The notes beneath the pieces are model-generated. The model saw only the letters and a list, made by a program, of their open reading frames with translations. It made no database searches and was not told the DNA's origin. Below, piece by piece: positions 13,887 through 64,000 of a stretch of DNA of 64,000 nucleotides (position 1 is its first letter; each line of letters opens with the position of its first letter). This DNA is from Isurus oxyrinchus. Taxonomy: Eukaryota. Both the position numbers and the translations under genes were made by a program. The stretch is from assembly GCA_026770705.1 (NCBI GenBank), contig JANJGN010000026.1, positions 36,456,001 through 36,520,000 of the forward strand. The letters run 5' to 3'.

Positions 13887-14178
13887 ATCTGAGCGATGGA
13901 GATTCTGTTACTCAGCGCGAATCCTCGCTCACACAGGCAGAGCGAGAAGATGTCGCTTTAACCTGCATCTTTACTGGCGATGGTTATTACTTATCCTGGT
14001 GCTGTCAATACCCAGACAGACAGCCCGAGTTTGCACTCCAGAGACACATGGGCGGTGATTCTGAATTTGCTTAGAGCCGGTTTTCTGATACATTCCAGCA
14101 GACAGACAGATTGTACCGATTGACCTTCTCGGAGCTGCGGCTGTCTGACACCGCAGTATATTACTGTGCACTGAGTCT
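13887..14178 (+). pseudogene. TCR alpha/delta V pseudogene (paralog of 60803-61100)
   Basis: AG acceptor at 13885-86. Reads DSVTQRESSLTQAEREDVALTC...SWCCQYP...LSDTAVYYCALS with an in-frame TAG at 14072-74. Degenerate RSS CATAGCG-12-TCAATAACT. No leader found. Confidence 0.9.
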
Positions 14179-15121: not shown

Positions 15122-16892
15122 GCAATCAGAATGCCGCAGGCAATATTTTCTTCAATTCAGAGCGACTGCTTAGGAGTAATATTTCTAGGAGACTCAAAAG
15201 GTAAGTAAGATCGATTGTTGTAATTCTATATCGTGATAATACTATAGTTGCTGCACTAGGGTGTACCTCTTTTTATATCACATTACACTGAGTGGTCAGC
15301 ATTGATTGTTGCCTGAATATACAATGTGTGAAGGCGTAAGTTTGGTGAGTGAGGGTGTTCAGTGAAGATACAAATTAATTAATCAAAATAAATGTAATTC
15401 GCTCAATAAAGATGGCAGGAGAGGTGATGTGTCTCGGCTGCAGCATGTGTGAGCTACTGGCTTGCACTGCAATCCATGGCAACCACATAAGACCATAAGA
15501 CTTAGGAGCAGAAGTAGGCCATTCGGCCCATCGAGTCTAGGTCCGCCATTCAGTGAGATCATGGCTATTCTGATAATCCTCAACTCCACTTTCCTGTCTT
15601 TCCACTATCACCCATGATTCACTTACTTACTGTATTTCTCAACCTTGGATATATTTAACGACCTAGCCTCTTTGGTAAACAATTCCACAGATTGACGACC
15701 CTCTGAGAGAATAGATTCCTCCTCATCCCTATTTTAAGTGGGGGGCCCCATTACTCTGCGATTATGCCCACCCCCACCCCCCCCCCCCCCCCCCCCCCCC
15801 ATCCCACGTCCTAGGAAACCCTGTGCCACTCTGCGTAACATCTGTCGCTTGTAAAATGCTAGAGTCAATTATTAAGGAAGTAGTAACAACCTAACTAGTG
15901 TCTTACAAATGTTCAACATGACATGTACAACTCTTTTCCACAATGCCCCTATTAATAAAGCCTAAGATACTGTATGCTTTATTAACTGCTCTCTCAACAT
16001 GCTGTGCCATCTTCAATAGCTTATGTACATATATATACGCAGGTTCCTTTGTGCCTGCATCTCCTTTAGAGTTTGTCCCTTTATTTTATACTATTTCTCC
16101 ATATTCTTTCGGCCAAAATGAATTGCATCACACTTCTGTGGCATTGAACTTCTTCTGGCAAACCACCCACGTCTCTATGTCCTTCTGAAGTTCAAATCTA
16201 TCCCAAACAAAATTCACAAAGTTTCCAATCTTTGTATTATCTGCTAGTCTTGGAATTTATCTCAGAACAGCACAATCTAGTTTCTTACATCCAGGTCACC
16301 ATAAGAAGACAAGTGTTATTCGTGGGAGCGTTGCTGAGCTGGAAGTCAGTGAATAGAAGCAGCTCGAGCTGCGCTGCAGCCAGTGTCCTCATTGTGGGAA
16401 TAGTTCAGCTGCTAGAGACCGGGGTTGGGCATAAGAGTCCGGTACGTTCATTAGGGACTGTCTCGATGTCCTGGGCCCACATCCCACCTTTAACAAACAC
16501 CACCCAATACGAACTCATGCACCGACCTCCCGGTTCATCACTGTGGGGTAAGGAGGGCGGCAGTACAACTGGCAGAAAGAAAAGCTCCCTACCCCCAGCC
16601 CTGTACAACAGAGTATTGTGGGAGGGGATTTCACATCCGGATCACAATCCCAATGTAGAGTCAGAAAATTGCAGCCTCCTTTTATAAACCTGTCTCTTAT
16701 TCACAAAACATTTAGCCAGCGACCCGAGAACCGTGCGGCCCATCAATGATCTCAGCTAAGCTGCCCTTTGTAAATCAACTCGATCCCCTAAGGTGTTTCA
16801 GTCCAGCCCTGAAGTCCGGTCTCCCAGGGCAGTCCAGGGCTGCAGTCTCCAGCTCCCCGTCACATAAACCCCCAGCTCTAGGCAGCAGAGCG

Positions 16893-16935
16893 ATGGGAAT
16901 CCTCCTTGTTTTCACCCTGTGTGTCTGTATACCCC
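16893..16935 (+). CDS. Leader exon of NAR-TCR V
   Basis: ATG-MGILLVFTLCVCIP is hydrophobic. It is 43 nt (phase 1) with a GTGAGT donor at 16936, in frame with the V exon. Confidence 0.9.
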
Positions 16936-17083
16936 GTGAGTACCGATCAAACAAACCGACATTGTGTGGGTTTAATATAAAGCTGCTTGAGTCCATCCCA
17001 ATTACAGACAATGTCTGCGGGTTTAACCCCGCTCCGTGGTTCGGCTCTGATGGTCCATTACACTCTCTCTGTTTAATTTCCAG

Positions 17084-17371
17084 GCTCTTTCAGTCAGTCA
17101 GTGACACAGACCCCAGCAGCGGTGACCAGGAAGGAGTGTCAGTCTCTCACCATCACCTGTGCTTATTATGGTTATTATTATTTACAAAATGGACACTTCT
17201 TCAAACAAACCCAGACCGGGACAGAGTGGGAGCGGATCTCCAGCGGGGAGAGATTTGTTGTGTCGGTGAATAAAGCAGGAAAGACATTTTCACTGGAAAT
17301 TCGGGACATGAGAGTTGAAGACACCGCCAACTATTACTGTAAAGCTCAGTATAGATACAACATTGGTTAAT
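17084..17371 (+). CDS. NAR-TCR V segment (IgNAR-like V, lacks CDR2)
   Basis: AG at 17082-83. Reads SFSQSVTQTPAAVTRKECQSLTITC...GHFFKQTQTGTEWERISSGERF...DTANYYCKA. Short NAR-type FR2/CDR2 region and an extra FR1 Cys at 17137-39. Followed by a J and a leaderless V. Confidence 0.88.
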
Positions 17372-17399
17372 CACAGAGGAAAAGGCCTGAACAAATAGC
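17372..17399 (+). promoter_or_regulatory. RSS with 12-bp spacer after NAR-TCR V
   Basis: CACAGAG (17372-78), 12-nt spacer, ACAAATAGC (17391-99; 7/9 to consensus). No nonamer is present at the 23-nt position. Confidence 0.7.
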
Positions 17400-17713
17400 T
17401 CTGTACAATTAAAATATATATTCTCCGGGCCCAGATAGTGAATTGTCGGGTTGATGTTATCATCGCTGGAATCTGATTACGTTTTATTGTAATTTCCACC
17501 ATTCCATTATCTTTCTTTGATATTTGTCTCGGTTTATATGAAGCGAACATCTCGTTCCCTGGACCAGTTACTCAGCCCTCAGGGCCTCACAAAGCACAGT
17601 GTGAGCCAGCAGACATTTTGAAACATTGAATATTGTTTATTTTTTTCAATCCACTGAATATATGGCAGTTTCTACTGTCTGGTGATGATTTCCCGCCAGG
17701 TTGAGTTGTCGGT

Positions 17714-17752
17714 GGTTCTTGTGCCGGGGAGACTGAGAGCAGTGTTACTGTG
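17714..17752 (-). promoter_or_regulatory. 23-bp-spacer RSS of the NAR-TCR J
   Basis: GGTTCTTGT (17714-22), 23-nt spacer, TACTGTG (17746-52). Confidence 0.88.
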
Positions 17753-17805
17753 GTGGAAATATGATTCTGTGGATGGATCCGGTACGATGTTGACTGTCAT
17801 AGCCG
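17753..17805 (+). CDS. NAR-TCR J segment
   Basis: Reads WKYDSVDGSGTMLTVIA with a GxG-T-x-L-T-V J motif. Phase-1 GTAAGT donor at 17806 and an upstream RSS. Confidence 0.9.
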
Positions 17806-19054
17806 GTAAGTGACTCCAGCCACCCTCCCCCTCACACCTGTTGCGGCCTGTCCTAGCTAATGTTCACCCGCTGCTTTTTATTGTGATCAGTGTCAGTTCA
17901 GTCCCACGAAAAGGAAAACAGATGGTTTTCATAAGGAAACCTCTCTGTTGGCTTTTTCGATTTGGGGGCAGAATATTATTCAGGAGCCGGGTCGAATGTC
18001 TAGGTGAAACTATGTGTGAGATCTGTCGGACTAGGCGGTCAACGGGATCAGGGTGGGTGGAGGATGGAGTGTAAACATAGGCATCAATCAATTAGGCCGA
18101 ATGGCCTATTCCTCTTCTGCAGATTGTGTATAATGTAAAACCTTCGAGAATACTCCGCTCAGAGAACCAGGGACAGAATCAGTCAATGAGCGGAAAGAAT
18201 TGAAATTGTCAGAGAGCCGGAAGAGACAGCTCCCAGTGAGTAACAGGGAAACCACTGCGGAAACTGAACAGACTGATCCCAACCGACAACTGAGAGAGAT
18301 TGGGACAAGTTCCCACGATTGCAAAAAGCGCAAACAGCACATTAACGTAAAATAAAGTGAGAGTAACTGTAAATATTTCAAATTAAAAGGACACGGAGAA
18401 ATTTGGGCCCTCATGTTAGATGAATATAGAGAAACAGATCAAAAAGTTGATAGAAACTCCCGAGCAGTGGTCAACTCCAGCAAATGATTAACCTTTGACC
18501 ACCTATGTTCACTATCGGTTTGGCCCAATCAGTGCTGATGAATCTCATCAAGTTATTATGGATCTTGCTTTGATGCTAAACAGTTCGGTTAGTCTCGGGC
18601 AATCATTTTGGAAACTGATTGCTTCGCTGATAATAAAATGTTCCTTCTGGAAAAATAGAAACAGAAATGTAATATATATTACATGCTGCACTGCAGTTGA
18701 AATCCGGTCCATCCTGTCGGTGCTGCCCCTCTAAAAATGCAACCCAATTATCCCCACTACTCTCTTTCCCCGTAGCCCTGTGTTTTTCCATGTTCCAACA
18801 TTTATCCATTACTCGTTTGGAAAACACCCTTAACCAGTTTCACCGTCTGTTCAGACAATGCATGCCAAATAGTAAGAACTCGCTCTGAAACACAAAATAA
18901 CACCTCATCCTTTCACTGCTTCATATTTCAATAACAGTGAATGAAGTTAAAGCAGGTTATAAATTAAACAAACTCACCCAAAACCACAGCATCTACTGCG
19001 ATTAACAAGTTTCCCAGTCTCTAAATAGATTAAGATCAAATTTTTCTCCTGCAG

Positions 19055-19360
19055 ATTCCAGTTCCATTGTATCCCAGAATCCGCCTGTCCAAACCTCTGC
19101 TGTGGGTGACACCGTTACTTTAAGCTGTGAGTATTCAGGTGTCTGTCAGTACACAGTACACTGGTACCGTCAGTCCCCAGGACAGGCTCCGGATTACTTG
19201 CTTCAGAGACATGCTTCAGGAGAAGAGGATAAAGAAAACACTGTTGGGGGGAGAAGTTCTGCTTCTATCGATCCTGCCGAGAAAATCAGCCGGTTAAATA
19301 TCTCCAAACTACAACTGAGCGATTCCGCTGGGTATTACTGTGCACTGAGTCAGCGCACAG
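19055..19360 (+). CDS. Supporting TCR delta V of NAR-TCR (leaderless, CDR1 Cys)
   Basis: Polypyrimidine tract and AG at 19053-54, phase-compatible with the J donor. Open frame SIVSQNPP...LSCEYSGVCQYTVHWYRQ...DSAGYYCALS with an extra CDR1 Cys at 19144-46. No leader exon seen between J and V. Confidence 0.9.
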
Positions 19361-19457
19361 CACAGTGATACAGAGCACGGAGGGTGCCATACAAAAACCT
19401 GAACATGGAGGGATTAGACACAGTGATAAAGAGCAGGGAGAGAGCTGTACAAAACCT
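19361..19457 (+). promoter_or_regulatory. Two tandem 23-bp-spacer RSSs
   Basis: CACAGTG-23-ACAAAAACC (19361-19399, consensus) and CACAGTG-23-ACAAAACCT (19419-19457). Confidence 0.9.
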
Positions 19458-21884
19458 GAACATGGTGGGATTACAGACATACAATGACACAGAGTGCAGG
19501 GATATTGGGAACTCAAACATTATTCACGAACATTTTCTCAAAGGTTGTCCGCATTTTACCGCACAGGATAAAGTGCTTAAACTGATCAGGTCTGCATTTC
19601 CTTCTCGCTCCTCCCACCCTTGAATTTTCCTCTCTGCCCAATGCTCCTGTGAATATACTTCATGAAATTATTTCACATTCTCACACTCCATTATTTCCCA
19701 TGAATCGGTATTTTACCGATTCATAATAACTCAAGTGAGTTTATTGCCACCTTTTTCTACGGGGACCGGGAGATTTTTTTCTCTCTCTTGTTTGGTCCAG
19801 TCCGCCTTTTACCGATTGAGTTGATAAGAAGTCACCGCCTCCTGTGATTTCCTTGATTCTGCCTACGATCGGCTGAGAGATTCTCTCAACTCAACAGGAC
19901 ATTTACTGTCTGTTGGAACAAAAACTGGGGCACCTCTCGACTAGAAAGGATTTAGATCCAGACATGTAAGATAGCATCTCCCACAATTGAGCGTAGCTGG
20001 GAGTGGCCTCTATCTGTGACACGGACCGCTCTGCACTCGGGACAAACGGGCCACACATGCGGACTGGAACAACACAGCCTCTTACAATCGGCCTGTTCTA
20101 TTTCAATCAACCGCCGCAGCCGCGCAGCGGGTTACCGGGCTCAAACATGACGGAAATCAAGTTTTATGAAGCTGATCAATGATTTCCCCATAATGGATGA
20201 CGTCAAAATGCCTTCTATCAGTCACAACCCATGTTTCACCCAATCAACCAGGGCCAGGGGGTCGGGGACCGGTGGGTGGGGGAACAGCCGGGTGTGGGGC
20301 GCCTCCAGCTCAGCTGATAGCCTGGGCATAAGAATGGATGCTATTTGACTAAAGGATGTAATCAGGAGCGAAATGGTGCTGGGCAAATAAATTACAACTG
20401 TTTCAAAGTCTGGATTTAGCTCAGTTTAGGGCCCCATTGTTCATAATTGTTATTAGAACATGCCTGGAGGCCGGATGTTACGTCACTATCCGTGTTCTCC
20501 TCTGTCTCCCCTGAGCAATTAGAGCTGCTCCGTCTGGTCTCACTACCTTCTCCCATTCCTCACTTAGATCAAGGGGGCGCTAATAAGATGATTTTGACCA
20601 GGTTCTCTCTTTCACCTGGCGACTCCTGTAAAGGGTACAAAGATATGAAGTCGAGGTAACTCTTTTTAGGCGAGTCCCCCAGAAGAAGTCCAGAATAAGC
20701 GTTGTCCACAAGTTGTTCATGCCCTGACAAGGTGTCTCAGGGAGTCTCCCGATGTGGTTCACTTCACAGGTGCAGCAACAATGAGCATGAAAGGGTGACC
20801 CCCTGTCAGTGGCGAGCGTCCCTTTAAACTGCGCTTGCAATTAACACCAAGATCGTGTTTTTTCCCGATCACCTGGACTCTGTTGGAGAGTGCTTTACTT
20901 GAAGCATTTGCACCAATCGCTGTGCAGCATCTTTAAGTAAAGCGAGCAGGCATTTTTGCAGCCTCACTGCGGCTCCCAGCTCTGACTTCAACTTCTTTAT
21001 CGACATTACCTCGTGACCCCGAGTTCCATACTCCTCAGTCTGGAGAAACTTCCACCCAGTATCTGCCCTGTAAAGCCCCTGAAGAATACTATTTGTGTTC
21101 ATGAGATCACCTCTCATCCTCTTAAACTCTAGGGATTATAGGCCCGAGCTACTCAATCTCTTCCCATTGGACAATCCATTCATCTCAGGAATCAGCCTGA
21201 TGCACCTTTGCTGCACTCCTTCCAAAGCATCTTGATCTCTCTTCTGTAAGGACACCAAAAATTTACACAGTATTTCAGACTGGAGTCCATTTCAGTCCTC
21301 CCCTGCATAAAACTCACCCAGCATCCTGGGGTCGGATTGCACTTTGAAAGGCGGCCAGAGATCATCCAATCCTTTTCTCCCTTTGGACGAGCTATTTCTT
21401 GCTGGTTGTCAATGAACATGCCACCAGTTTCTAATGGTTCCCTTATGTTCATGTTCTCCTTTATAAGATTAATGCATCATCCTTATTCTCTCACTGCACT
21501 ATGTTGTTTCCATTAACATTAATCAGGGATACAGATAAATTACAGCAATCCCAACTCTCAACATCTGCTTTAAAATAGAGAGAAGTGTCTGCAGTTCCAA
21601 ACTTTCACGTTTCAGCCTGAGGGCTGAAAAGGAGGAGAGTGATTGGTTCTACGAAGACAATTGAAAGATATGGCGGGGACAATGTCACTAATTTCAGTCA
21701 TTGATTGTCCAATAATAAAATTCCATATTTACCCACATCAGGATCACTTATATCTGAAGTCCGTTGTGTCACTCTCCCGTTTTTCTCCCGGGTCAGGTAT
21801 TGAACAAGCCACTGCAGGTATCCAAACTTGCCGCAGTTGTGTTGAGTTTATTCACCTGGTGCCTCATTCACATTGTACGGCTTG

Positions 21885-22160: not shown

Positions 22161-25100
22161 CTTTCCCTGTCTCTGTCTGGGCCTCTCTCCCTTTGTCTAT
22201 TGCATTCTCCTTCCCTTTCTAAATTTCTGTCTTTGTTGTTGTGTCTCTCAGTTGTCTCTCGCAATCTCTCTCTCTCTCTCTCCCTCTCTCTCTCCCTCTC
22301 TCTCTCTTTCTCTCTCACCCCCTCCCGTCTCTCTCGCACACACACTTTCTGCTCTCTGCGTCAATCTTTGTCTCCATCCTGTGACTCTTTCTGAGTGTCT
22401 CGGCATATTTTCCTCCTTTTCTCTCCCTCATCTCTCACTTTCTCTCTTTCATTCTACTTTCCTTGGCTTTCATGCTCTACTTTCATTGGTTCCAATCGAA
22501 AGTGTCACTTTTCCCTTTTTTGTTCAGAATCCAAAATATTCGCAAACTTGACTTTCTGTCAATAAAACGTTTTAACTTTGGATGCAAATTTACAGCCGGA
22601 AAGCATCGGTTTCTGATTCTGGTGCTGTCAGAGGTGAAGATTCAGTGTTCACAAAATGAACTCCCACCATTCAGGTTATATGGCAGCCCAGCGATATTTT
22701 CCGTACAGTGCCTATATCGGTTTGTATCACTGAATATTCAGCACACAATAAAACATCCCACTGTCACTCAGTTCTATATCTGTCAGGATTAAACTGAAAA
22801 AACGATCTGATACCCGGAGTGTGGAATAGATTCGGCCGCCCACACGCTCTGCTTACTGCCCTCCCTCTGAATTCATTTTGATTTTCAGTGTCAGCGCCTT
22901 CTCATTTCTTTGGTGCCAGAAAAGATCATATCGGCGGCGACCTGTGGAGTTTCAACAGGGCAATACCATTCATCCTTTCTCCAAACATGATACTGATGAT
23001 GCAGGTTGCTTAATTGTATTTGAATAGTACAGACTTTCGAATAGTCAATGAACAGAAGACAAATGGATGTTTAGATACTGGAGACAACAATAAATCCTCG
23101 TTCCTTTCCTTCATCGCACCAACATTGTCTGAGGCCATTCAGCTCATCGTGTCAGTGTAGCCTCTTTGGCAGAGGCACCAAATTGTTCGCAATTCACTGT
23201 TCACCCTGCTTTGTCTTGCAAAGGTTTCCATTTCAAGTAGTTACCCAATTATGTTTTTGACATTTGTTATTGAAACTGCTTCCACCAACCTATCCGGCAG
23301 TGCATTCCACAACTCAACAACTTAGAGTGCAAATAAATGGCTGCTCAGGTTGCCTTTGATTCTTTTGCGAATTAATTCAAATCCAAGTTCTCTGATTACT
23401 GAGATTTCCGCCGGTGGATGCAACTTCCCTTATTTATTCAACTAAAACAGCTCATAATTGTTAATATCTCCATCGCAAGTCCTCTCAATCTTTTCTGTTC
23501 AACACAGAACAACCGCAGATTCTCAAGTCGCTCCACAAAGCTAAAGCCTCTCATCAGTTGAAGCTTCCTAATAAATCTCTCCCGCACCTTCTGCAAGACC
23601 GTCAAATCATTCATCAGGTGTGGTTCACATATTTATACACAACAGTCCAACTGAGAACTTAACAGCTTTCTAGAAATATTTAGCAAAGCATCCTAATCCT
23701 ATTGATAAAATCAAGAATTTAAAATCTTCTTTACAGCAGTCCCAGCCTCCACTACCAACTTCAAACGTTTGTGCACTTTGCAAAGTCTCCATCTCTCTGT
23801 TCCGACAGCGCCAATGAACTTGCATCATTATGTTCATATCGGATATCCTCATCACCTTCAGGCATGAAGAAAGTCAAACAGAGATAGGTGAGCAAAAAGT
23901 ATCTGGAGAGGTGCAGAAAGGCTAACTGCAAGATACAGAACCATATGTAGATAACTGTTGAATACCTTTATCAGAATGCACATCACTTAACTTGCTGGGA
24001 TTGGGGGGTCTGGTGGTTGGGGGTTCCAAACACTTACATATTGTGTGGAGTCAGGATGTCACATCGGAAAGACAGGGATAGTTTTTTTGTACGGGCCTCT
24101 CGTTGTCTGGTGACGTTCTGTTTCCTAGAACCTAGCTATCCACAGTGCTGTCAGACAACTTCGCCTAGTGAATGGTTAAATGGACCGTTCTTGCAGCTTT
24201 ATGTAAGGTAGCACATATCACATGCTTCCCAAAGATGTTTGTTATGACTTGGCAGGCCTGGATGTGTGCCAGACGGACCAAACCCACAAGGGAAAATTGG
24301 CCACGTTATCACAGTTTTGCAATTTGTTTTTATTCCGAGAAGTTTTGTGCACTGAATTCAGAAGTAATGAGCCTACTGGAACCTTTAGAGATTTTTTAAA
24401 AACCATATTTAAACATATATTAACAACAGGAAATATTTCAAGCACACACACATACGTTTAGAGTTGCTGAGTACTATAACAAATATCAAACTTTCTAATT
24501 TACCTGATTACAACCTGCACACACCTATTGGGGAAATATTCTAAAATAGATTTTAAATTAAAATAAATACAAGCAAGCAAGGTTAGCAAAGGACACACTC
24601 GACAGCAGAATTCCAAGGGCTTTTACCCAACTTTAGCTCCTCGACACAGTTGATGTTTGCTCACATGGTTAGAGGCTTCCCCAAAGCTATTTCACACACT
24701 CCTGTTAGATCTTACATACTTCCTGAAACATGGGCCCCATTACCTCAGTGGGTTGAATGATTGTGAATATCGGTGTCAAGCAGATGAAAGGCAGCATGTT
24801 ATCAGATTAAGAAACACACCAGCAACAGAGGCTCAGGCCCACAGCAAAAACTTCATAAATCCTGAACAATATGGTATTGGGCACAATCCACCCTCCGAGT
24901 GAACAGTGGAGTTACATGAGTCAGCCGCCTGAAAAATTCAAAGGAATTTAAATCTCTGCGATCCATGTGTGGAAATGGCAGCTTCGATGACAGGCTGACA
25001 GGTTGTTCGACATATGTCAATTTCCATTACCCCCCGAATCAACATCACTGAAGCAGATCACCAGGTCATTATCACGTTGTTCTTTGTGGGAGCTTGAGGT

Positions 25101-29080: not shown

Positions 29081-30090
29081 TTGGTAGAAACATTTGCTCA
29101 AGTTTACAAACCGCCAGAAGAATTTGCTGGAATGCATATATTTCACTGTGGATTTTTTTTTCTGACTGGTATAACTGCCATCCTGCGGTTTTTGTTTTTC
29201 AGCTCAAAAAATAAACTAGGTCATCAAAACCCTGTTGTCTCAGATATAGATAAAGGGAATTTGGAGGAGAGCAGATTAATGAGTCAAATTATCAGAAAAG
29301 TGAAGGCGAGCTGTTTTAAATCCAGTCCAATATTCTTAATGTGGGAGTAGAGAGCCTTTTGAGGGGCTGCGCTCAATAACTGTTCGTGGATTGGTGCACA
29401 GAATATCCCATTTGCTTACGCAGCGCCGCAAAGGCCAGTCCTGAGGCCAAGTCGAGTTACATACACCATTTGTACCAGTGTTGGGTGAAAAACAGAAAAA
29501 GATGTGGACAGGCCCACAAGTTGCTATAATTAATTTACTATTTCCATCAACAATTACAGAAATCAAAGGACGGCCCAGTCCATCCAGACTGCCCCGTAGT
29601 AGGAATTAAGTAAATTGGAATTGCAGTCACTATGGTAATGTAGGAAATGGTCAAATTATGCACAGCAAGCTCCCACAAAGAGCAGTGTGATCATTTGTTT
29701 CATTGATATCGTTTGAGGTTTAAATGCACGGGAGATTTGACCAGCTCTTTTGTGCAATAAGTGGTGGGGTGTTTAAGGTCCTCCTCGGGGAGGAGGGCGG
29801 GAGTGCGTGAGAGGCGGAATTTCCATTTAATAGCTCATCCGAAAAATGCTACCACGGACATTGCAGCACTCCCTTCATACTGGCAGAAGTGTCAGCCTGA
29901 GTTATGTGCTCACGCCTCTAGAGTGGGGCCTGAACACACACATTTCTGATAGAGAAGCAGAGTTGTGAGATGGAACAGTTAAACTGAGCCGCGGATAGCA
30001 CTTACCCACAAAGGGTGGGTTTCTATGAGCTGGTAGTTCTACATCACTGCGGGTTTTTTTACAGCGACAGATGAGTTTTAAACCAATGTG

Positions 30091-30523
30091 TTGCGGCTGT
30101 GTCCTGGATTTCCGCTCAAGTGAACGTTAGAGGAAACTTCTTTCCTTCGTTAGTCTGACCCGCCTCGGATTTCCCTTTGGTAAAATCTGCATCTCTTTTA
30201 CTGCTTCTATCTCGATACAAAATAAAACGCAGAACCTGATTCGTGTGCTGTCTGTACCAGTACAGGCCGGGATTACTATGATTTGTTGTGTAGCTACAGT
30301 CTATTTTTTTGCTGTCTCCTTCAGTAACATGCAGTGAGGTCTGAGGTTGGGACACAGAATCTGCCTGAATCAAACCTGAAATAAAACGTAACGAAAAACG
30401 AATGCAATACTGAGTTTAAAAGTCTATTAACATCACATAACTGCAAATGGATAAAATGATCTCGCTGCACCTACCGAACATCAGCCACAATAAAATCAGA
30501 TGACGATGTGGCATAAGCCACAT
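30091..30523 (-). pseudogene. TCR V pseudogene with leader (L 30523-30475, V 30375-30091)
   Basis: Leader MWLMPHRHLILLWLMF with GTAGGT donor. V reads DSVSQPQTSL...DCSY...LYWYRQ, has an in-frame TGA at 30118-30116 and lacks the YYC segment. RSS CACATTG-23-AAAAAAACC (30090-30052). Confidence 0.9.
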
Positions 30524-31925: not shown

Positions 31926-32229
31926 ACCTTCAATCCGCAGAAATAGATGGCGCTGTCTTTAGGCTCTGCTGCAGAAATTGACAAAGGAAAAACTTGATGT
32001 TGACGGAAATCACGAGCATCGAATTTTCCGTTCGCAAACTCCACATCCCTGCACCTAGTTTTATCATAGTACAACAGAGACTGGGATGCCTGGTTCGGGT
32101 ACAGCCGGTACCAGCCGCAACACGGATCATGAGAACTGGAGTTGTATTTACAGTTCAAAAGTGGATTATCTCCCTCATGTAGCTTCAACTCATATTGACT
32201 CTGCATTACCGAACTCCCTTGGGTTTTAT
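31926..32229 (-). CDS. TCR V segment with open frame, extra cysteines and weak nonamer (ORF or pseudogene)
   Basis: AG at 32231-30. Reads SSVMQSQYEL...LNCKYNSSSHDPCCGWYRLY...DSAIYFCGLK. Heptamer CACAGTG at 31925-31919 but the nonamer is poor. A candidate leader MTAVELFLISFVI starts at 32463. Confidence 0.8.
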
Positions 32230-55845: not shown

Positions 55846-56069
55846 ATGTAAGAAATAAAAAGAGAGAAAAAAAACTGAGAGAACTCCAGACACCATCTAC
55901 TGCCTCATCCAATCTATTGCTGAAACTCTGATGATCAGTCCCTTCACCACCTCCAGACTCCAATTATTCCAAATTAGTTGCTAACTGTTCGACATCCAAC
56001 GTTGCATTGAACATTTGTCAACACAGAGGACATTACAATCAGTTCTGGTCACAAACTCTGCCCTCTATC

Positions 56070-56573
56070 CACTGCGCCTCGTCTTCCACACTCAGGCCGC
56101 TTATATTGAGATAACCGGACTGTTTAGACTTGTCAGCAGCCGCCAGATATCGTCCTGAGATTTCATCTTTTCTCAGTCCTACTACTTTGGTAATTATCCA
56201 GCTTGGAGGCTGTGCCGATTTATGCTGATACCATTGCATAATGTCTATAGCCTGGTCTGTATATTCGCAATCTAACTGCACCGAACCCCCTTCTGACACG
56301 GTTAACATCACTGGGGTCTGAGTTACTGGATCGGCACACAGTCCGCCTGTGAAAATAGAGAAACAGAAGAGTATACGGTTAAAGAGGATCCATCTAAACA
56401 TCTAAATAACTGCGCAAATTCCCATGAACAAAGCTGTTCATAATATGTATACATCTGCTCGTTAATCCTATTAATTGCTAGTGCAAACCCTTTGCCTCAA
56501 TCTGCTAATGTGTTTTGATTAACATAATCCAGTACTTACTGCCCCAGACAGCCGCCAGTATAATCAGAAACAT
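56070..56573 (-). pseudogene. TCR V with intact leader (56573-56540) and V exon (56346-~56070) truncated at its 3' end
   Basis: Leader MFLIILAAVWG with GTAAGT donor. V reads DPVTQTPVMLTVSEGGSVQLDC...WYQ...SVEDEA and then lacks YYC and any RSS. Confidence 0.9.
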
Positions 56574-57841: not shown

Positions 57842-58345
57842 ATGGGGAACCGTTTCGCTTTTTCCTCATCATTATGTCACTTCTCAGTAAATATTTCCTT
57901 CCCCATGAATAATCCGTTTCTTCTAATTACTGCAACACAGATGTTGTTCTTGACAAAGCAATATTGATGGTGATGGTGATGATTATGTTGATCAATATGA
58001 GGCTGATACTGATTGTTGTTATTGCTATTGTCTTATGTTAGACTGGAGCCACCAAGACATAGTGGAACTGCCGGTTGCTGCAATAACGTTTGACGAGAAA
58101 AGTAATATTACAGTAGCTTGCACATTGAAAACAAGCACTTCTAACCATTATGTGTACTGGTACAGTCAGCGCCCCGAGCAGCCTCCACAGTACATGCTTT
58201 ATATTCTGGGAGGGAAACCATTCAGAAATAAGGACATCAGTGATCGGTTTTCAGCAATGTTTAATGAAACTGTAAAGATTACCGAACTCATGATCAGTAA
58301 CATCCTGATCTCTGACAGCGCGGTATATTTCTGTGCGATGGACCC
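57842..58345 (+). CDS. TCR V segment (V exon 58042-58345 open; leader 57842-57886 apparently frameshifted)
   Basis: Reads QDIVELPVAAITFDEKSNITVACTL...YVYWYSQ...SDSAVYFCAMD. RSS CACACTG-24-ACAAAAACC (58346-58385). The leader is 45 nt and out of phase with the V exon. Confidence 0.85.
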
Positions 58346-59195: not shown

Positions 59196-59488
59196 GCAGA
59201 CTATGCGCACATCCAGTAACTGAGGCACCGGTTGCAATAACGGTGTCAGAAGGGGGTTCGTTGCAGTTAGACTGTGAATATAGAGAACGGAATATGTATT
59301 ACTTGCAATGGTATCGGCAGCAGACGGCACAGCCTGCAAACTGGATTATTACCAATATCATAGCACTGAAGAAAGATGAAATTTCAGGACGATATCTGGC
59401 AGCTGCTGACCAGTCTCAAAAGAACGGTTACCTCAAAATCAGCCAACTGAGTGTGGAGGACGAGGCGGTTTATTACTGTGCAGTGAGG
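59196..59488 (+). CDS. TCR V segment with open V exon; leader not identified; 12-bp-spacer RSS-like signal
   Basis: AG at 59194-95. Reads HPVTEAPVAITVSEGGSLQLDC...LQWYRQ...EDEAVYYCAVR, followed by CACAGAG-12-TAAACAACC (59489-59516). Confidence 0.85.
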
Positions 59489-60207
59489 CACAGAGTTAGA
59501 ATCTTGTTAAACAACCTCAGCGGCTTTTGATCCCGGGTTCCAGAGGAGCAAAACAGACAGGTCTATTTACCGCTGTTTTATTGTTCTGTTTGTCCTTGTC
59601 CAAATCCACAGAGAAGCAGATTTGGGAAATATATAAACTTATCTTCATCCGCCTTTTATAGGGTAAATAGCTCCCAAATTACGCGGATATCGATTTGCCA
59701 ACAGAGGCAAAGAAAGCTCTCAGAAGTGGAGTTCCTATAACTGATAATTCTGGGTTGCTCTTACAGAACCGTTAACTCAGGTGGACCCAGGATGGATTGG
59801 TGGATGGGTGGATTGATTAGTTTTTATTGGGGAAAAATAATTCTATTATTTCGTTGGACGGGGGCGTGAATATCTTCATTCACATTGAACAAGTGCTCTT
59901 TTTAAGACGATGGTCAATTAGATATCAAGCAATCTCTCAGATCAATTAGTCATCAAGGGTCTATATTTACTGGCCTCTCTGCTCAGCAGAATGCGCCGTT
60001 AAAGTCTTAGTTCTCAGAAATCAATAGATTTGTGGTTATGGAATTGACATCAGACCAATGAGATCCAGTGATCTCAGCTCTTCCTTTGGCAGGTTCTGCA
60101 GGGAGTGACATCAGATCAGAAGCAGCCAGTGTTCTCAGCTTTTTCTTGTTTCATATTCTGCGGGTTTCTGACGCACAACTTGTCCCCCAAACCCCGGAGC
60201 AGCTGCA

Positions 60208-61100
60208 ATGCGTATCTCCGTTCTCGCTGTGATCTGGGTGACATTCGTTGTCAGCAAGAAATTTAAAACATTTTTAAAGAAGGCTTCAGTTTCTGGAGGG
60301 ATAAATATGAAGAAAAAGACTGGGGAATTCATGTTAATCAAGCGCTGGACCTACGTTAGAGTGCACTTAAGTTATTGTCTGCAGACTTGGTATCTTCCTT
60401 ATAAGAAGAATAAAGAAACATAAAACACAATGTAAAAATTAATTACAATGCTGATGCCAGAATTGAGAGATAATAACTCTCGAAGAACACTGAAGAGACT
60501 GGGCGTATTTCCTCGAGTAATCAGAAGACTGATGGGTAACCGGATAGAGCTCTTTAACATGAGGAGGAGTTTCGATCGGGAAGATATGGGAAAGATGCAT
60601 ACTGTTGAGGAGAATTCCAAAACTTTGGCTCATAAATAAGAGTCACAGAAAGACCCAAAGGGGAATTCATGAGGAACTTCTTTCTCCTTTAGAATATGGA
60701 ATTCACTGTCAGAAGGAGGAGATGAGCAAAATTTTCAGTGTCAGTTCTTTTTAGTCGAACTTTTAGTCGATGGTTTCCGTTTTCATTAACCGTGTCTTCC
60801 AGATCTGATCCATGGAGATTCTGTTGCTCACGCCGAATCCTCACAGGCAGTGGGAAAAGATGTCATTTTAACCTGCACCTATACTGACGATGTTTATTAC
60901 TATTTCTGGTACCAACAAGGCCCAGGCATACAGTCCGAGTTTGCAATCTGCAGGCACAAGAGCGGCAGTTGTGAACTGAAGGCAGATTTCGCTCAGGACC
61001 GGTTTTCTGATACAGTCCACCAGTTAGGCAAGTTGTATCGATTGACCATCTCGGAGCTGCAGCTGTCTGACACCACGGTCTATTAGTGTGCACAGAGTCT
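60208..61100 (+). pseudogene. TCR V pseudogene (leader 60208-60253, V exon 60803-61100)
   Basis: Leader MRISVLAVIWVTFVV with a GC donor. V has TAG at 61084-86 in place of the Tyr before Cys. RSS CACAGCG-23-ACAACAACT (61101-61139). Confidence 0.9.
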
Positions 61101-62396
61101 CACAGCGATGGAACCGAGCGGAACCCTCGTACAACAACTGCTGCAGCTTTCTGGGTCGCAGTTGCTATCTGCTGAGGGCTGTTTATAACAACGGGTCAGA
61201 CACTGACACGTGAATCCATTCTGTGCCCGCAGACCCCGAGCACAATCCACATAAACACCATCTAAAATCACTCACATCGAATACTGATTCAGTCTGATTA
61301 GTGTATTCATTGTGTGAGGTCAAAATTGGCTTTTGTTTGATTGGGCTCTCTGGAAACGCGCAACTCCCATTGAGAATACAAACCTCTGTAGGCCGCCTGT
61401 AATCAGGTTTTTCCCTGTACCGCTGTTATGGAAAGAACCCAGGGAAAAAGAACAAATAATGTTTGTTTTGAAATATCAGTCTAAAGTGGGTCTTCGGTCA
61501 CGTGTTGGTCAGACAAGACAGGGATGCCAAATTTCCTTCCCAAAAGGCATTGGTGAACTAGGTATTCGGTGTCAATTGATGTCATCACTTCATTATCACC
61601 ATTACCGAGATATGTTTTATACTCTAGATTTATTAATTGAATTTAAGTTCCATCAGCTGTCGTGGTGTGATTTGAACCCGTGTTCCCCTAAGTGTTGGCC
61701 TGGATCCTGGATTACTAGTCCCGTGATATTGCCAACACTCCAACATCTCCTCACATTTAGCATCAATTCCTGTCAGTAACATCAAAAACAATACAGACAA
61801 CGACTACTCAGGTCCAAATTCGATTCCTGTGAGAGATTGTCTGACATTGGCCCTTTAATATGAAAACCAAGAAGCCCTAGATCCTATCAATGACCACATT
61901 CCACTTATCAATGGCCCCATTCTAAACAGGTCCGAACACACTTCGCCAGTAGAGGGCGTCCAGGGCATCACCAAGTCTCGTGAAACGAACACCAAAGCCA
62001 ATAGGGATGGTTTCTTGAGTGATGTTGCAATGGCCCCAGCCCTCTGCAGTGTGCACGTGGAACAATGAACTGAACAGAGCCCGGGTTCCTTCTCCACTTC
62101 TCAATCTCTGGATCGTTGAATTCACATTCACTGAGAAAGATTCAGTCAGACATATTTCTGATAATACTGACAGCTGTCTTGGACTGTCAATGCTGGATTA
62201 TGTTCATCATTAAAATAAACAAATTAACACATTGATCCAATTGCAGCTTGTACAGGTATTCAATGTTGTTAGCGATCCTGTATATGCATATTATGGACAG
62301 TTTGGTAGGTGGGAATTTACATAAACTCATACAGCTAAACACAGGTTTAGATCGATCCGGTTTAACCTCCTGGATTTTGTTCCTCTAACTTCACAG

Positions 62397-62689
62397 GTGG
62401 ACTATGTGCAGATGCAGTAACACAGTCTCTGGTGACACTGGCCGTGTCAGAAGGGGGTTTGGTGAAGTGAGACTGCGGATATAAAACCCTGTATTTATAC
62501 ATCATGTAACAGTATTGGCAGAAACCGGCACAGCCTCCAAGCTGGATCATTAGCAAAGCAGCAGCACTGAAGGGATTGAAAATCTGAGAACGATATCTGG
62601 CTGCTGCTGACGAGGCTGCACAGCCCGATTACCTCAATGTAAGCAGCCTGGGTGTGGAGGACCGGGCGGTCAACTCATGTGCAGCGAGA
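62397..62689 (+). pseudogene. TCR V pseudogene (family of 56346 and 59196)
   Basis: Reads GLCADAVTQSLVTLAVSEGG... with several stops. RSS CACAATG-23-ACAGTAAGC (62690-62728). Confidence 0.88.
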
Positions 62690-64000
62690 CACAATGTCAG
62701 ATAAAATCGAAGAACCCGGACAGTAAGCTCAGCGAGTGTTCACAGCTCCATTAATTTCTCTTTGGCTCTTTCATCTGCGGGAAACAAAGCCGACTGAGAA
62801 CAAAGATTAGCAGGTTTGTTTATCAAACAATTGCATTGCTGTTTTTGTCCTTCTCCACATCAACAGGGAACAGGTCTGGGAAATCTTGAGCCTTATCTTC
62901 AAGTCCGGAGCTCTATCTACTCGGTAAATGTCTCGAAGTTCACCCGGAATATTGATGTGTGAACAGAGGTAGAGAAGGTTCTCAGATATTCAGTAACTAA
63001 AGCCTAACATTATGAAATGTTCTTCCAGGCCGTTAACTCAGGCAGACCAGAGGACATTCTTCGCCATTCATTCCTGTAACAAAATATAGAATTTATCCAA
63101 GTCTGGGACTAGATGTAACATATAAAATATACAACGCCGATTTTTACCTAGACTCAGCATATAACACGACAATTGTTACAATAAAGGGATGCGGAGAGCA
63201 TCTGATTTCGATTTCGACAGGGAATAACTGAACGTAGAAAGTTTTTTTAGGTATTTTTGCTCTGATATTAAAGAGTGATCACATGTCAGGGGCAGAATCA
63301 CTTATTGGGATATCGAGGGAGAGTGTTAATAAACATGCAGCTCTCTGATAATGGCACAGGCGACAAACGGTCGTAAGAACAAACATCACAGGCCTCGCGT
63401 TTGCCAGTCGCTGGCACTTCAAAACATTAAAATGTGAATCGAGCACCGATCCAGATGGTTTTCCAGGAAAAATATCCTGCTGGTATTTCAGAACCAATAT
63501 CTGAAATATAATGCACCCTGCTGGGGCTTTCACCCTTATATTTCCATGGAGCTGTTCTGACTTAAGAAAAATAAGTTGGTTGATAACGATTGTTTTGCAT
63601 GATTAGTTTGCATTTACAGCGGCCTGTGGTGCAGATAGTATATCCTTAAGCGAGCAGGGGACGGCGCAGGTGGGGAAAGAGGCTCAAATCCGAATACCAG
63701 GAATGATTGGATTCCGTGGTGCCGGAAATTATCATTCCCCACAGCAGAATTCATAATCTCCCTCTATCAGGGCAGAGCAACCAAGGAAACCGAACGGTTT
63801 GGAAAGTGTCTTGACTGGAAAATGATTTTAACACTCTTTGTAGGTAAGAAACGGCAGTTTCAGACACCTGGGTGTATGATTGCAGGAAGAGGCACATGTG
63901 GAAAACGCTTACCGATCCTGTAGAACGACTCTCATTCTTCTCAATCATCGAGTTAATTACTTTCATCCTCACCACCTCGAGTAACCCTTTGTCAGCACAA

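What the first reader, a model, noticed from the sequence alone, without database searches (positions are those of the whole stretch)
17341..17752. D-less NAR-TCR cassette: extended V end with a 12-RSS facing a 23-RSS J (probable germline V-D join)
Seen: after YYCKA the V continues for ~25 nt (QYRYNIG) up to CACAGAG-12-ACAAATAGC. The J carries a clear 23-RSS, no RSS-flanked D lies between them, and the gap is only ~380 nt. Established: NAR-TCR N-terminal domains are described as V-D-J rearrangements, TCR alpha/delta and IgH-type V segments normally carry 23-RSS, and sharks have germline-joined Ig genes. Inference: V and D were pre-joined in the germline, leaving the D's 3' 12-RSS. The NAR domain would then be made by one V(D)-J event with a largely hard-wired, semi-invariant CDR3. 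I cannot confirm from memory the exact RSS layout of all published cassettes.
Basis: partly seen in the sequence, partly recalled or inferred. Interest (0 to 1): 0.8.

Follow-up and report, generated by a model that had tools for sequence, protein, structure and literature searches.

The report
D-less shark NAR-TCR V-J cassette
In a lamnid shark T-cell-receptor locus, the extra antibody-like "NAR" V gene has a short-spacer recombination signal facing its own J gene with no D gene between, so this domain can be built in one cut-and-paste step rather than the two usually stated. The layout is inherited and shared with a sister species, but how it arose and whether T cells use it are not shown.

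Summary
An intact NAR-TCR cassette lies at 16893-19399: leader, NAR-type V, J, and a leaderless supporting V-delta. Its V ends in CACAGAG-12-ACAAATAGC (17372-17399). The J carries GGTTCTTGT-23-TACTGTG (17714-17752). No other RSS lies in the 314 nt between them, and this is the only 12-RSS of that quality in 64 kb.

DNA contigs of the same species, at single-copy depth, and of a relative about 2% diverged carry the same unrearranged layout. It is therefore inherited, not somatic.

- Most of the "25-nt extension" is the normal V end. Eight other shark NAR-TCR V models place their heptamer after a 3-6 codon x-Y-x-Y-x tail, so only 10 nt (17362-17371) are extra.
- A germline V-D join remains the likeliest origin (about 0.45) but is not shown. 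The distance from Cys to nonamer equals that of 23-RSS V genes, so a new heptamer inside an old 23-spacer is a live rival (about 0.25).

The tail ends in an in-frame TAA that must be trimmed. One junction still diversifies, so "semi-invariant" overstates it.

This scan has already reported the same cassette class many times elsewhere in this genome.

The parts
16893..16935 (+). Leader exon (MGILLVFTLCVCIP plus 1 nt), donor GTGAGT at 16936
   Evidence: It matches the leaders of white shark and basking shark models, MGILLVFTLCVCLPRSFSQSV.
17084..17371 (+). NAR-type V exon. It has a Cys in the a-b loop (KEC), HFFKQ in place of WYRK, YYCKA, then the tail QYRYNIG-stop.
   Evidence: Pfam V-set E=8.8e-7. 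It is 77-86% identical in the core to lamnid NAR-TCR V models. The defining features are those listed in PMC1845163.
17347..17361 (+). Family-typical V-encoded CDR3 stem (QYRYN)
   Evidence: Chiloscyllium P0016 ends ..YYCKAWYRYN and then has A-Q-stop, which is G+CACAGTG+A read in frame. Seven further models place the heptamer 3-6 codons after YYCxA.
17362..17371 (+). The 10 nt ATTGGTTAAT that are extra relative to short-ended paralogues. They contain an in-frame TAA at 17368-17370. They are a candidate D remnant, or a former heptamer plus the start of a spacer.
   Evidence: Inference from comparison with translated relatives.
17372..17399 (+). V 12-RSS: CACAGAG-12-ACAAATAGC
   Evidence: It is the only 12-RSS of this quality in the window (0.35 expected). 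It is collinear with the RSS read from P0003.
17400..17713 (+). V-J intervening DNA, with no D and no RSS
   Evidence: Germline contigs of two species bridge it.
17714..17752 (+). J 23-RSS: GGTTCTTGT-23-TACTGTG
   Evidence: Basking shark models read the same region as ..AVSLWW.., where ours reads AVLLWW.
17753..17805 (+). NAR J segment (WKYDSVDGSGTMLTVIA plus 1 nt), donor GTAAGT at 17806
   Evidence: The J motif DGSGTxxTVxA is as in the models.
19055..19360 (+). Leaderless supporting TCR-delta V exon. It follows the acceptor ..ctcctgcag and has a Cys in CDR1 (SGVCQY). It is in phase with the J donor (G+AT = Asp).
   Evidence: Pfam V-set E=4.6e-16. It matches the ADSSSIISRNPPVQ.. part of the white shark model P0017.
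19361..19399 (+). Perfect 23-RSS of the supporting V (CACAGTG-23-ACAAAAACC)

Best explanation
This is an intact, inherited NAR-TCR cassette of a D-less class.

How it would work (inferred). In a thymocyte, RAG would pair the V 12-RSS (17372-17399) with the J 23-RSS (17714-17752). It would delete the 381 nt between the two cut sites in a single step. An untrimmed join is out of frame and keeps the TAA at 17368-17370, so at least 2 nt of the V end must be trimmed. CDR3 would then be a hard-wired V stem (KAQYRYNI-), one N/P junction, and a hard-wired J head (-WKYDSVDGSG), about 17 residues without any D. The J donor at 17806 splices in phase to the leaderless supporting V-delta at 19055. That V must rearrange separately, through its own 23-RSS, to TCR-delta D/J.

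A likely side effect (inference from the mammalian TCR-delta/alpha RSS layout). A 12-RSS on the NAR V forbids joins to the 12-RSSs on the 5' side of D-delta, J-delta and J-alpha. The NAR J 23-RSS cannot be reached by ordinary 23-RSS V genes. The cassette is therefore self-contained.

Origin (the least certain step). It derives from a V(23)-D(12/12)-J(23) ancestor by fusion of V with D in the germ line, by RAG or by plain deletion. That fusion left 10 nt of D and the D's 3' 12-RSS.
For: - Anatomy and reading frames.
- RSS pair beyond chance.
- NAR-TCR hallmarks as listed in PMC1845163 are all present.
- Germline status: contigs of run X1 (same species) bridge 17293-17556 and 17527-18072 at depth 357-363. 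That equals the flanking single-copy contigs (376-417).
- Shared with a relative: contigs from organism B, in runs from different studies (X5, X13), carry the same V end, RSS, gap and J.
- Conservation: the differences from organism B listed are 2 in the V exon (both synonymous), none in either RSS or in J, 2 in the supporting V, and 29 in about 1560 nt of gap and intron.
- A second contig: P0003 translates to the same heptamer-12-nonamer (..PQW NGEG QIP..), and our DNA is collinear with it (24 minimum differences in 66 nt, background 38.8, sd 3.4).
- A 23-RSS type exists: P0007 and P0015 of Chiloscyllium read CACAGTG-22-nonamer in frame. The 23-RSS type is thus present in a shark order from which the cited paper states VDJ joining.
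- Precedent: VD-J partly joined clusters, made by RAG in germ cells, are established for shark Ig genes (PMC4279169, PMC5192425). A J with a 23-RSS is the IgH-type layout, in which a D has 12-RSSs on both sides (established knowledge).
Against: - No transcript or rearranged read was found.
- Both RSSs are imperfect: heptamer position 6 and nonamer positions 6 and 8 in the V RSS, heptamer position 7 and nonamer position 5 in the J RSS.
- Against the fusion origin specifically: the extra 10 nt could not be matched to any D.
- In P0003 the extra 10 nt begin with CAC-GG exactly where the Chiloscyllium 23-type V P0007, which has the same ..YWYYT tail, has its heptamer.
- The Cys-to-nonamer distance is the same in 12-type and 23-type V genes: 53 nt in P0003 and P0007, 50 nt in ours and P0015. 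A coding joint should have removed the heptamer, and it gives no reason for equal length.
Confidence: 0.5

Rival explanations
1. The RSS was remodelled in place, with no V-D join. The V's original 22/23-spacer RSS gained a new heptamer 10 nt downstream, inside its spacer. The old heptamer decayed into coding sequence (ATTGGTT in this copy). The old nonamer now serves a 12-spacer RSS. The V could then join J directly, and the bypassed D was lost from the gap.
For: - 10 (extra) + 7 + 12 = 29 = 7 + 22, so the Cys-to-nonamer distance is unchanged: 53 nt in P0003 (12-type) and P0007 (23-type), 50 nt in ours and P0015.
- P0003 and P0007 share ..YWYYT-H. In P0007 the His codon opens a perfect CACAGTG. 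In P0003 it opens CACGG, followed at +10 by (C)CA CAG TGG.
- P0003 may therefore carry overlapping 22- and 12-spacer signals on one nonamer.
- A paralogue in the same species reads ..QYEYEE CACGGCGACGGGTCTCG (loose end at 17351). This resembles the start of the Chiloscyllium 23-type signal (HSDRPR).
Against: - It rests on DNA inferred from translations.
- Beyond T-H, the P0003 tail is no more like the Chiloscyllium 23-type signals than shifted registers are (1.26 against 1.1-1.6 differences per codon), whereas P0007 and P0015 score 0.57.
- Making CACAGTG from the 23-type spacer seen in the paralogue would need about six substitutions.
- No relic of a D lies in the gap.
- I know of no documented precedent, whereas VD-J joins are well known in sharks.
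Confidence: 0.25
2. The layout is primitive. V(12)...(23)J without a D is an old, ordinary form of the NAR-TCR cassette, like a light-chain V-J pair, and the D-bearing cassettes are the derived form.
For: Earlier scan notes list many D-less copies in this genome (unchecked). The accessible papers give no RSS map of published cassettes.
Against: - Short-ended V genes with a heptamer directly after the x-Y-x-Y-x tail occur in Chiloscyllium, in the basking shark cluster (P0002/P0025) and in the ENA contigs.
- The two Chiloscyllium V genes whose signal can be read are 23-type.
- NAR-TCR is described as VDJ-rearranged in nurse shark (PMC1845163).
- The extra 10 nt are an addition relative to these.
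Confidence: 0.08
3. The cassette is intact-looking but unused. Weak signals and the terminal TAA make it a silent or decaying copy in a large, turnover-prone array.
For: - Both heptamers and both nonamers depart from consensus.
- There is an in-frame stop at the coding end.
- No RNA holder was found.
- Several neighbouring V genes in the window are pseudogenes with stops.
Against: - All exons are open, the splice sites are canonical, and both V exons keep their frame and hallmark cysteines.
- Exons and signals show fewer listed differences from the sister species than the gap and intron do. That list is incomplete.
- Stops at the extreme V end are removed by normal trimming.
- The contig of run X20 (a 93-Mb run, guessed to be RNA) covers 17082-17880 unrearranged at depth 5.6. 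It could be a germline transcript.
Confidence: 0.15
4. It is an artefact: the assembly captured a somatically rearranged lymphocyte allele, or it mis-joined paralogues.
For: None found.
Against: Short-read contigs bridge the V end, RSS, gap and J at single-copy depth in the same species. The same layout is present in two laid runs of a second species from different studies.
Confidence: 0.02

Closest known systems
NAR-TCR (doubly rearranging TCR-delta of cartilaginous fish; Criscitiello et al. 2006, as summarised in PMC1845163 and PMC12227049)
   Same: - A leader-bearing NAR-type V with a Cys in the a-b loop and no WYRK tryptophan.
- Its own J with a splice donor.
- A leaderless supporting V-delta with a CDR1 Cys and its own 23-RSS.
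- A position inside a TCR V array.
   Different: The NAR domain is described as made by a V-D-J rearrangement. Here there is no D, and the V carries a 12-RSS that pairs directly with the J 23-RSS.
Partly germline-joined (VD-J) shark Ig clusters (PMC4279169, PMC5192425, PMC2193156)
   Same: An extended V followed by a 12-RSS facing a 23-RSS J a few hundred nt away. The layout is inherited and present in multiple copies.
   Different: These clusters are reported for Ig genes (PMC5192425 calls joining 'peculiar to the Ig genes'), not for a TCR cassette. Identity of the extension with a D is not shown here, and the length arithmetic fits an alternative origin.
Shark Ig light-chain V-J clusters
   Same: One-step V-J joining within a compact cluster, with a V-J gap of a few hundred nt.
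   Different: The V is NAR-type, not VL. The J splices to a second V exon, not to a C exon. The cassette lies in the TCR alpha/delta locus.
Platypus TCR-mu supporting V cluster without D segments (PMC3457774)
   Same: A three-domain TCR chain in which one V domain is assembled without a D, which limits its diversity.
   Different: In platypus it is the second (supporting) V domain that lacks a D; here it is the N-terminal NAR domain. TCR-mu also arose independently of NAR-TCR.

Membership tests
NAR-TCR cassette | NAR-type V-set domain with its own leader exon | tested here: met
   Leader at 16893-16935 spliced in phase to the V exon at 17084. Pfam V-set. 77-86% identity to lamnid NAR-TCR V models.
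NAR-TCR cassette | Cys in the a-b loop and no canonical Trp of WYRK in the NAR V (PMC1845163) | tested here: met
   ..VTRKECQSLTITC.. and ..GHFFKQTQ...
NAR-TCR cassette | Downstream supporting TCR-delta V with no leader, a splice acceptor and a conserved Cys in CDR1 | tested here: met
   Acceptor at 19053-19054, exon from 19055, EYSGVCQYTVHWYRQ, and a 23-RSS at 19361.
NAR-TCR cassette | NAR domain assembled from separate V, D and J segments | tested here: not met
   No D and no further RSS between 17400 and 17713. The V 12-RSS faces the J 23-RSS.
NAR-TCR cassette | Expressed as the N-terminal domain of a TCR-delta chain | not testable with these tools
   No RNA holder was found. The only possible RNA contig is unrearranged.
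Germline VD-J partly joined cluster | V coding end extended relative to unjoined paralogues | tested here: met
   There are 10 nt beyond the point where P0016 (same ..YRYN tail) and seven other models place the heptamer.
Germline VD-J partly joined cluster | The extension matches a free D of unjoined paralogues, and the downstream DNA matches their D-J interval | not testable with these tools
The metagenome scan found nothing. Only translated relatives were available.
Germline VD-J partly joined cluster | V heptamer removed at the joint | tested here: inconclusive
   In P0003 the extension starts CAC-GG at the position of the P0007 heptamer. In this copy the same position reads ATTGG.
Germline VD-J partly joined cluster | Inherited, not somatic | tested here: met
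   Single-copy depth in the same species and presence in a second species.

The most novel reading that the evidence does not exclude
The 12-RSS arose by a switch of spacer class in place: a new heptamer formed inside the V's own 23-spacer. P0003 would be a living intermediate that carries overlapping 12- and 22-spacer signals on one nonamer. That would be a simple route by which a V-D-J receptor gene turns into a V-J gene, or the reverse, without any germline RAG event. Here it would also make the NAR V blind to the 12-RSS-bearing TCR D/J segments downstream.
Probability: 0.22. Interest if true: 0.7.

Novelty: new variant of a known kind. Interest (0 to 1): 0.45.

Why it matters
NAR-TCR is cited as the model of a doubly rearranging receptor whose outer, antibody-like domain is built by V-D-J joining.

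A heritable class of cassettes that builds this domain in one V-J step changes what repertoire to expect: fixed CDR3 flanks and a single junction. It would also extend germline remodelling of antigen-receptor genes, documented so far for shark Ig genes, to a TCR locus.

The 12/23 arithmetic further suggests how such a cassette stays insulated inside a TCR locus full of 23-RSS V genes and 12-RSS D/J segments.

This copy is one more member of a class the scan has already flagged repeatedly in this genome, so its own added value is modest. It contributes independent confirmation, a narrowing of the 'extension' from 25 nt to 10 nt, and a testable rival origin.

Tried and rejected
A scan of metagenome contigs with the V alignment gave 330 pattern matches, none of them a relative.
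- Literature. Criscitiello 2006 (PMC1458790), Roux 1998 (PMC21721), Ott 2021 (PMC7909615) and Deiss 2019 are not held. The 17 held papers since 2016 that mention NAR-TCR give no RSS map.
- NCBI models of about 234-258 aa at first looked like germline-joined VDJ exons. I rejected this: their 'junctions' translate the J heptamer (..SLW....TVS....TVY..), so they are predicted introns over unrearranged cassettes. They say nothing about the V signal or a D.
- Relic D in the gap. The lone CACAGTG near 17597 has no nonamer at either spacing.
- A second NAR V in the window. There is none; the other V hits are ordinary TCR V genes, several with stops.
- Spacer contraction by an 11-nt deletion, an idea in an earlier scan note. 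I rejected it here because the Cys-to-nonamer length is unchanged.
- RIC scoring of the signals could not be run, because no model is on hand.

Full report
**What is there**

The window carries one NAR-type V. All coordinates below are on the + strand.

| Part | Coordinates | Detail |
|---|---|---|
| Leader exon | 16893-16935 | MGILLVFTLCVCIP, donor GTGAGT |
| V exon | from 17084 | spliced in phase to the leader |
| V 12-RSS | 17372-17399 | CACAGAG-12-ACAAATAGC |
| Intervening DNA | 17400-17713 | 314 nt, no D, no RSS |
| J 23-RSS | 17714-17752 | GGTTCTTGT-23-TACTGTG |
| J | 17753-17805 | WKYDSVDGSGTMLTVIA, donor GTAAGT at 17806 |
| Supporting V-delta | 19055-19360 | leaderless, begins at a splice acceptor |
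| Supporting V 23-RSS | 19361-19399 | perfect CACAGTG-23-ACAAAAACC |

- The V is a short V-set domain (Pfam E=8.8e-7).
- It has the two hallmarks that PMC1845163 lists for NAR-TCR V: a Cys in the a-b loop (KEC), and no tryptophan in the WYRK motif (HFFKQ).
- After YYCKA the frame runs QYRYNIG-stop, up to the V RSS.
- The J donor and the supporting V acceptor are in phase (G+AT = Asp).
- The supporting V has the conserved CDR1 Cys.
- The whole unit matches NCBI models from white shark, basking shark and other sharks, which run leader, NAR V, J, supporting V.

**More than chance**

With CAC required and at least 6/7 and 7/9 matches, the V signal is the only 12-RSS in 64 kb. About 0.35 are expected on both strands, and it sits exactly at the V coding end. 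The J signal is one of six 22/23-RSS hits (0.55 expected), and at least four of these abut a V or J coding end. Relaxed thresholds (4/7, 5/9) find nothing else between V and J on either strand.

**Germline, and shared**

No single-run RNA holder was found.

I laid contigs of four runs on 16500-19700.

- In run X1, from the same species, contigs bridge 17293-17556 and 17527-18072 at depth 357-363. Flanking single-copy contigs are at 376-417. X1 differs from the window at several positions, so it is not the same haplotype.
- Organism B is about 2% diverged. Runs X5 and X13, from different studies, carry the same V end, RSS, gap and J.
- The differences from organism B listed are 2 in the V exon (17352 and 17355, both synonymous, both in the tail), none in the signals or J, 2 in the supporting V, and 29 in about 1560 nt of gap and intron. 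This suggests constraint. The tool did not list 21 further differences, so I treat it as suggestive only.

A somatic or assembly origin is excluded.

**How much of the tail is 'extra'**

Three word searches gave about 25 NAR-TCR V proteins.

- Seven models (P0001, P0002, P0004, P0005, P0006, P0012, P0016) read (A/T/P)-Q at the V end, followed by a stop in six of them. That is NCA CAG TGA, a consensus heptamer read in frame. It comes 3-5 codons after YYCxA. P0007 has its heptamer after six codons.
- The x-Y-x-Y-x tail is therefore ordinary V sequence in this family.
- Chiloscyllium P0016 ends ..WYRYN and then has the heptamer. Ours reads ..QYRYN and then ATTGGTTAAT before its heptamer.

Only 10 nt (17362-17371) are extra, not 25.

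**Which signal classes exist**

- Two Chiloscyllium models read through their signal. P0007 (..YWYYT HSD RPRLPVA QKL) and P0015 (..HTT HSD LTQPPAI PKR) translate CACAGTG, a 22-nt spacer and an A-rich nonamer. They are clearly homologous to each other (0.57 minimum differences per codon against about 1.4 in shifted registers).
- P0003, from an unnamed ENA contig, reads ..YWYYT HGT PQW NGEG QIP. That is (C)CACAGTG at +10, a 12-nt spacer and ACAAATNCC.
- Our DNA from 17359 is collinear with the P0003 tail and signal: 24 minimum differences in 66 nt against a background of 38.8 (sd 3.4), second best of 4000 registers.
- Both copies share the unusual T at nonamer position 6.

The 12-type unit therefore exists on at least one other public contig. 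Earlier notes of this scan list many more in this genome, including one 9.9 kb beyond this window. I could not check those.

**Origin**

The accessible papers state that NAR-TCR V domains are made by separate VDJ rearrangements (PMC1845163, PMC5931798). They also state that VD-J partly joined clusters, made by RAG in germ cells, are a known habit of shark Ig genes (PMC4279169, PMC5192425). A J with a 23-RSS is the IgH-type layout, in which a D has 12-RSSs on both sides.

Two facts sit badly with a clean coding joint.

- The lengths match too well: 10 + 7 + 12 = 29 = 7 + 22. The Cys-to-nonamer distance is the same in 12-type and 23-type V genes, 53 nt in P0003 and P0007 and 50 nt in ours and P0015.
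- P0003 and P0007 share ..YWYYT-H. The His codon that opens the heptamer in P0007 opens the 'extra' 10 nt (CAC GG.) in P0003.

Both facts are what a shift of the heptamer inside the old 23-spacer would give.

Against that rival:

- Beyond T-H, P0003 is not detectably like the Chiloscyllium signals.
- A paralogue of the same species, seen as a loose end at 17351 (..QYEYEE CACGGCGACGGGTCTCG), resembles the Chiloscyllium 23-type spacer but not ours.
- No relic of a D lies in the gap.

I put fusion (RAG-mediated or plain deletion) at about 0.45, remodelling in place at about 0.25, and a primitive D-less state at under 0.1. The question needs DNA of a D-bearing cassette, which I could not fetch.

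**How it would work**

All of this is inferred.

- The 12/23 rule allows one deletional V-to-J join over 381 nt.
- An untrimmed join is out of frame: 25 + 19 = 44 nt between the Ala codon and DGSG. It also keeps the TAA at 17368-17370.
- Productive joins therefore need at least 2 nt trimmed from the V end.
- CDR3 would be about 17 residues with fixed flanks and one variable junction. That is reduced diversity, not invariance.
- In the mammalian TCR-delta/alpha layout (established knowledge, not checked in this shark), the 5' signals of D-delta, J-delta and J-alpha are 12-RSSs.
- On that layout, a 12-RSS on the NAR V blocks joins that would skip the supporting V. The J 23-RSS cannot be used by ordinary 23-RSS V genes.

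**Use**

Use is not shown. The only possible RNA evidence is one contig of a 93-Mb run (X20, guessed to be RNA). It covers 17082-17880 unrearranged at depth 5.6 and diverges exactly at the V acceptor. It may be a germline transcript or a near-identical copy.

**Verdict**

This is a real, intact, inherited D-less NAR-TCR cassette. It is a new variant of a known kind and a further member of a class this scan has already reported on other DNA of this genome. The V-D fusion reading is plausible but unproven, and it now has a concrete rival.

Noticed in passing
window 19361-19525: The supporting V-delta is followed by three tandem RSS-like copies about 58 nt apart: a perfect 23-RSS at 19361, CACAGTG-23-ACAAAACCT at 19419, and a decayed copy at 19488. 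Self-BLAST shows the repeat at 80% identity. Reads show small indels here (AC after 19415, A after 19450).
   Followed up: partly
window 18065-18072: In all three DNA runs (the same species and the relative), contigs leave the window sequence at 18072 and re-enter at 18065, with more than 250 nt of other DNA on each side. The reads therefore carry an insertion flanked by an 8-bp duplication (TGGAGTGT) in the J-to-V-delta intron, and the assembled window lacks it. It could be a polymorphic transposon or an assembly collapse.
   Followed up: no
window 17082-17880: The contig of run X20 (93 Mb in total, guessed to be RNA, depth 5.6) covers the V exon, RSS, gap, J and 75 nt of intron unrearranged. 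It diverges 2 nt upstream of the V exon's first base into 327 nt unlike the leader intron. It may be a sterile germline transcript with another 5' exon, or a near-identical copy with a different upstream region.
   Followed up: no
window 17035-17355 against 17463-17783: Summed depth of contigs at least 95% alike is 12-26 times the single-copy level over the V exon, but only 2-3 times over the V-J gap. A paralogue contig leaves our sequence at 17351. Many V copies are nearly identical up to ..GCTCAGTA and diverge in the tail. The tool warns that depth is not copy number.
   Followed up: partly
proteins P0012-P0025 (NCBI models of six shark species): Automatic gene models of NAR-TCR cassettes join V to J through predicted introns that start in or near the V heptamer and end inside the J RSS. 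The model proteins therefore contain translated J heptamers (..SLWW....TVSK....TVY..). They can be mistaken for germline-joined VDJ exons.
   Followed up: partly
window 13904-14176, 22736-22945, 30092-30319, 31931-32173, 56069-56326, 58107-58340, 59207-59503, 60847-61098, 62453-62698: Nine further TCR-type V segments on both strands surround the cassette. Several have in-frame stops (14 kb, 22.8 kb, 30.2 kb, 61 kb and 62.5 kb). Only some keep a recognisable 23-RSS (30052-30090, 61101-61139).
   Followed up: no
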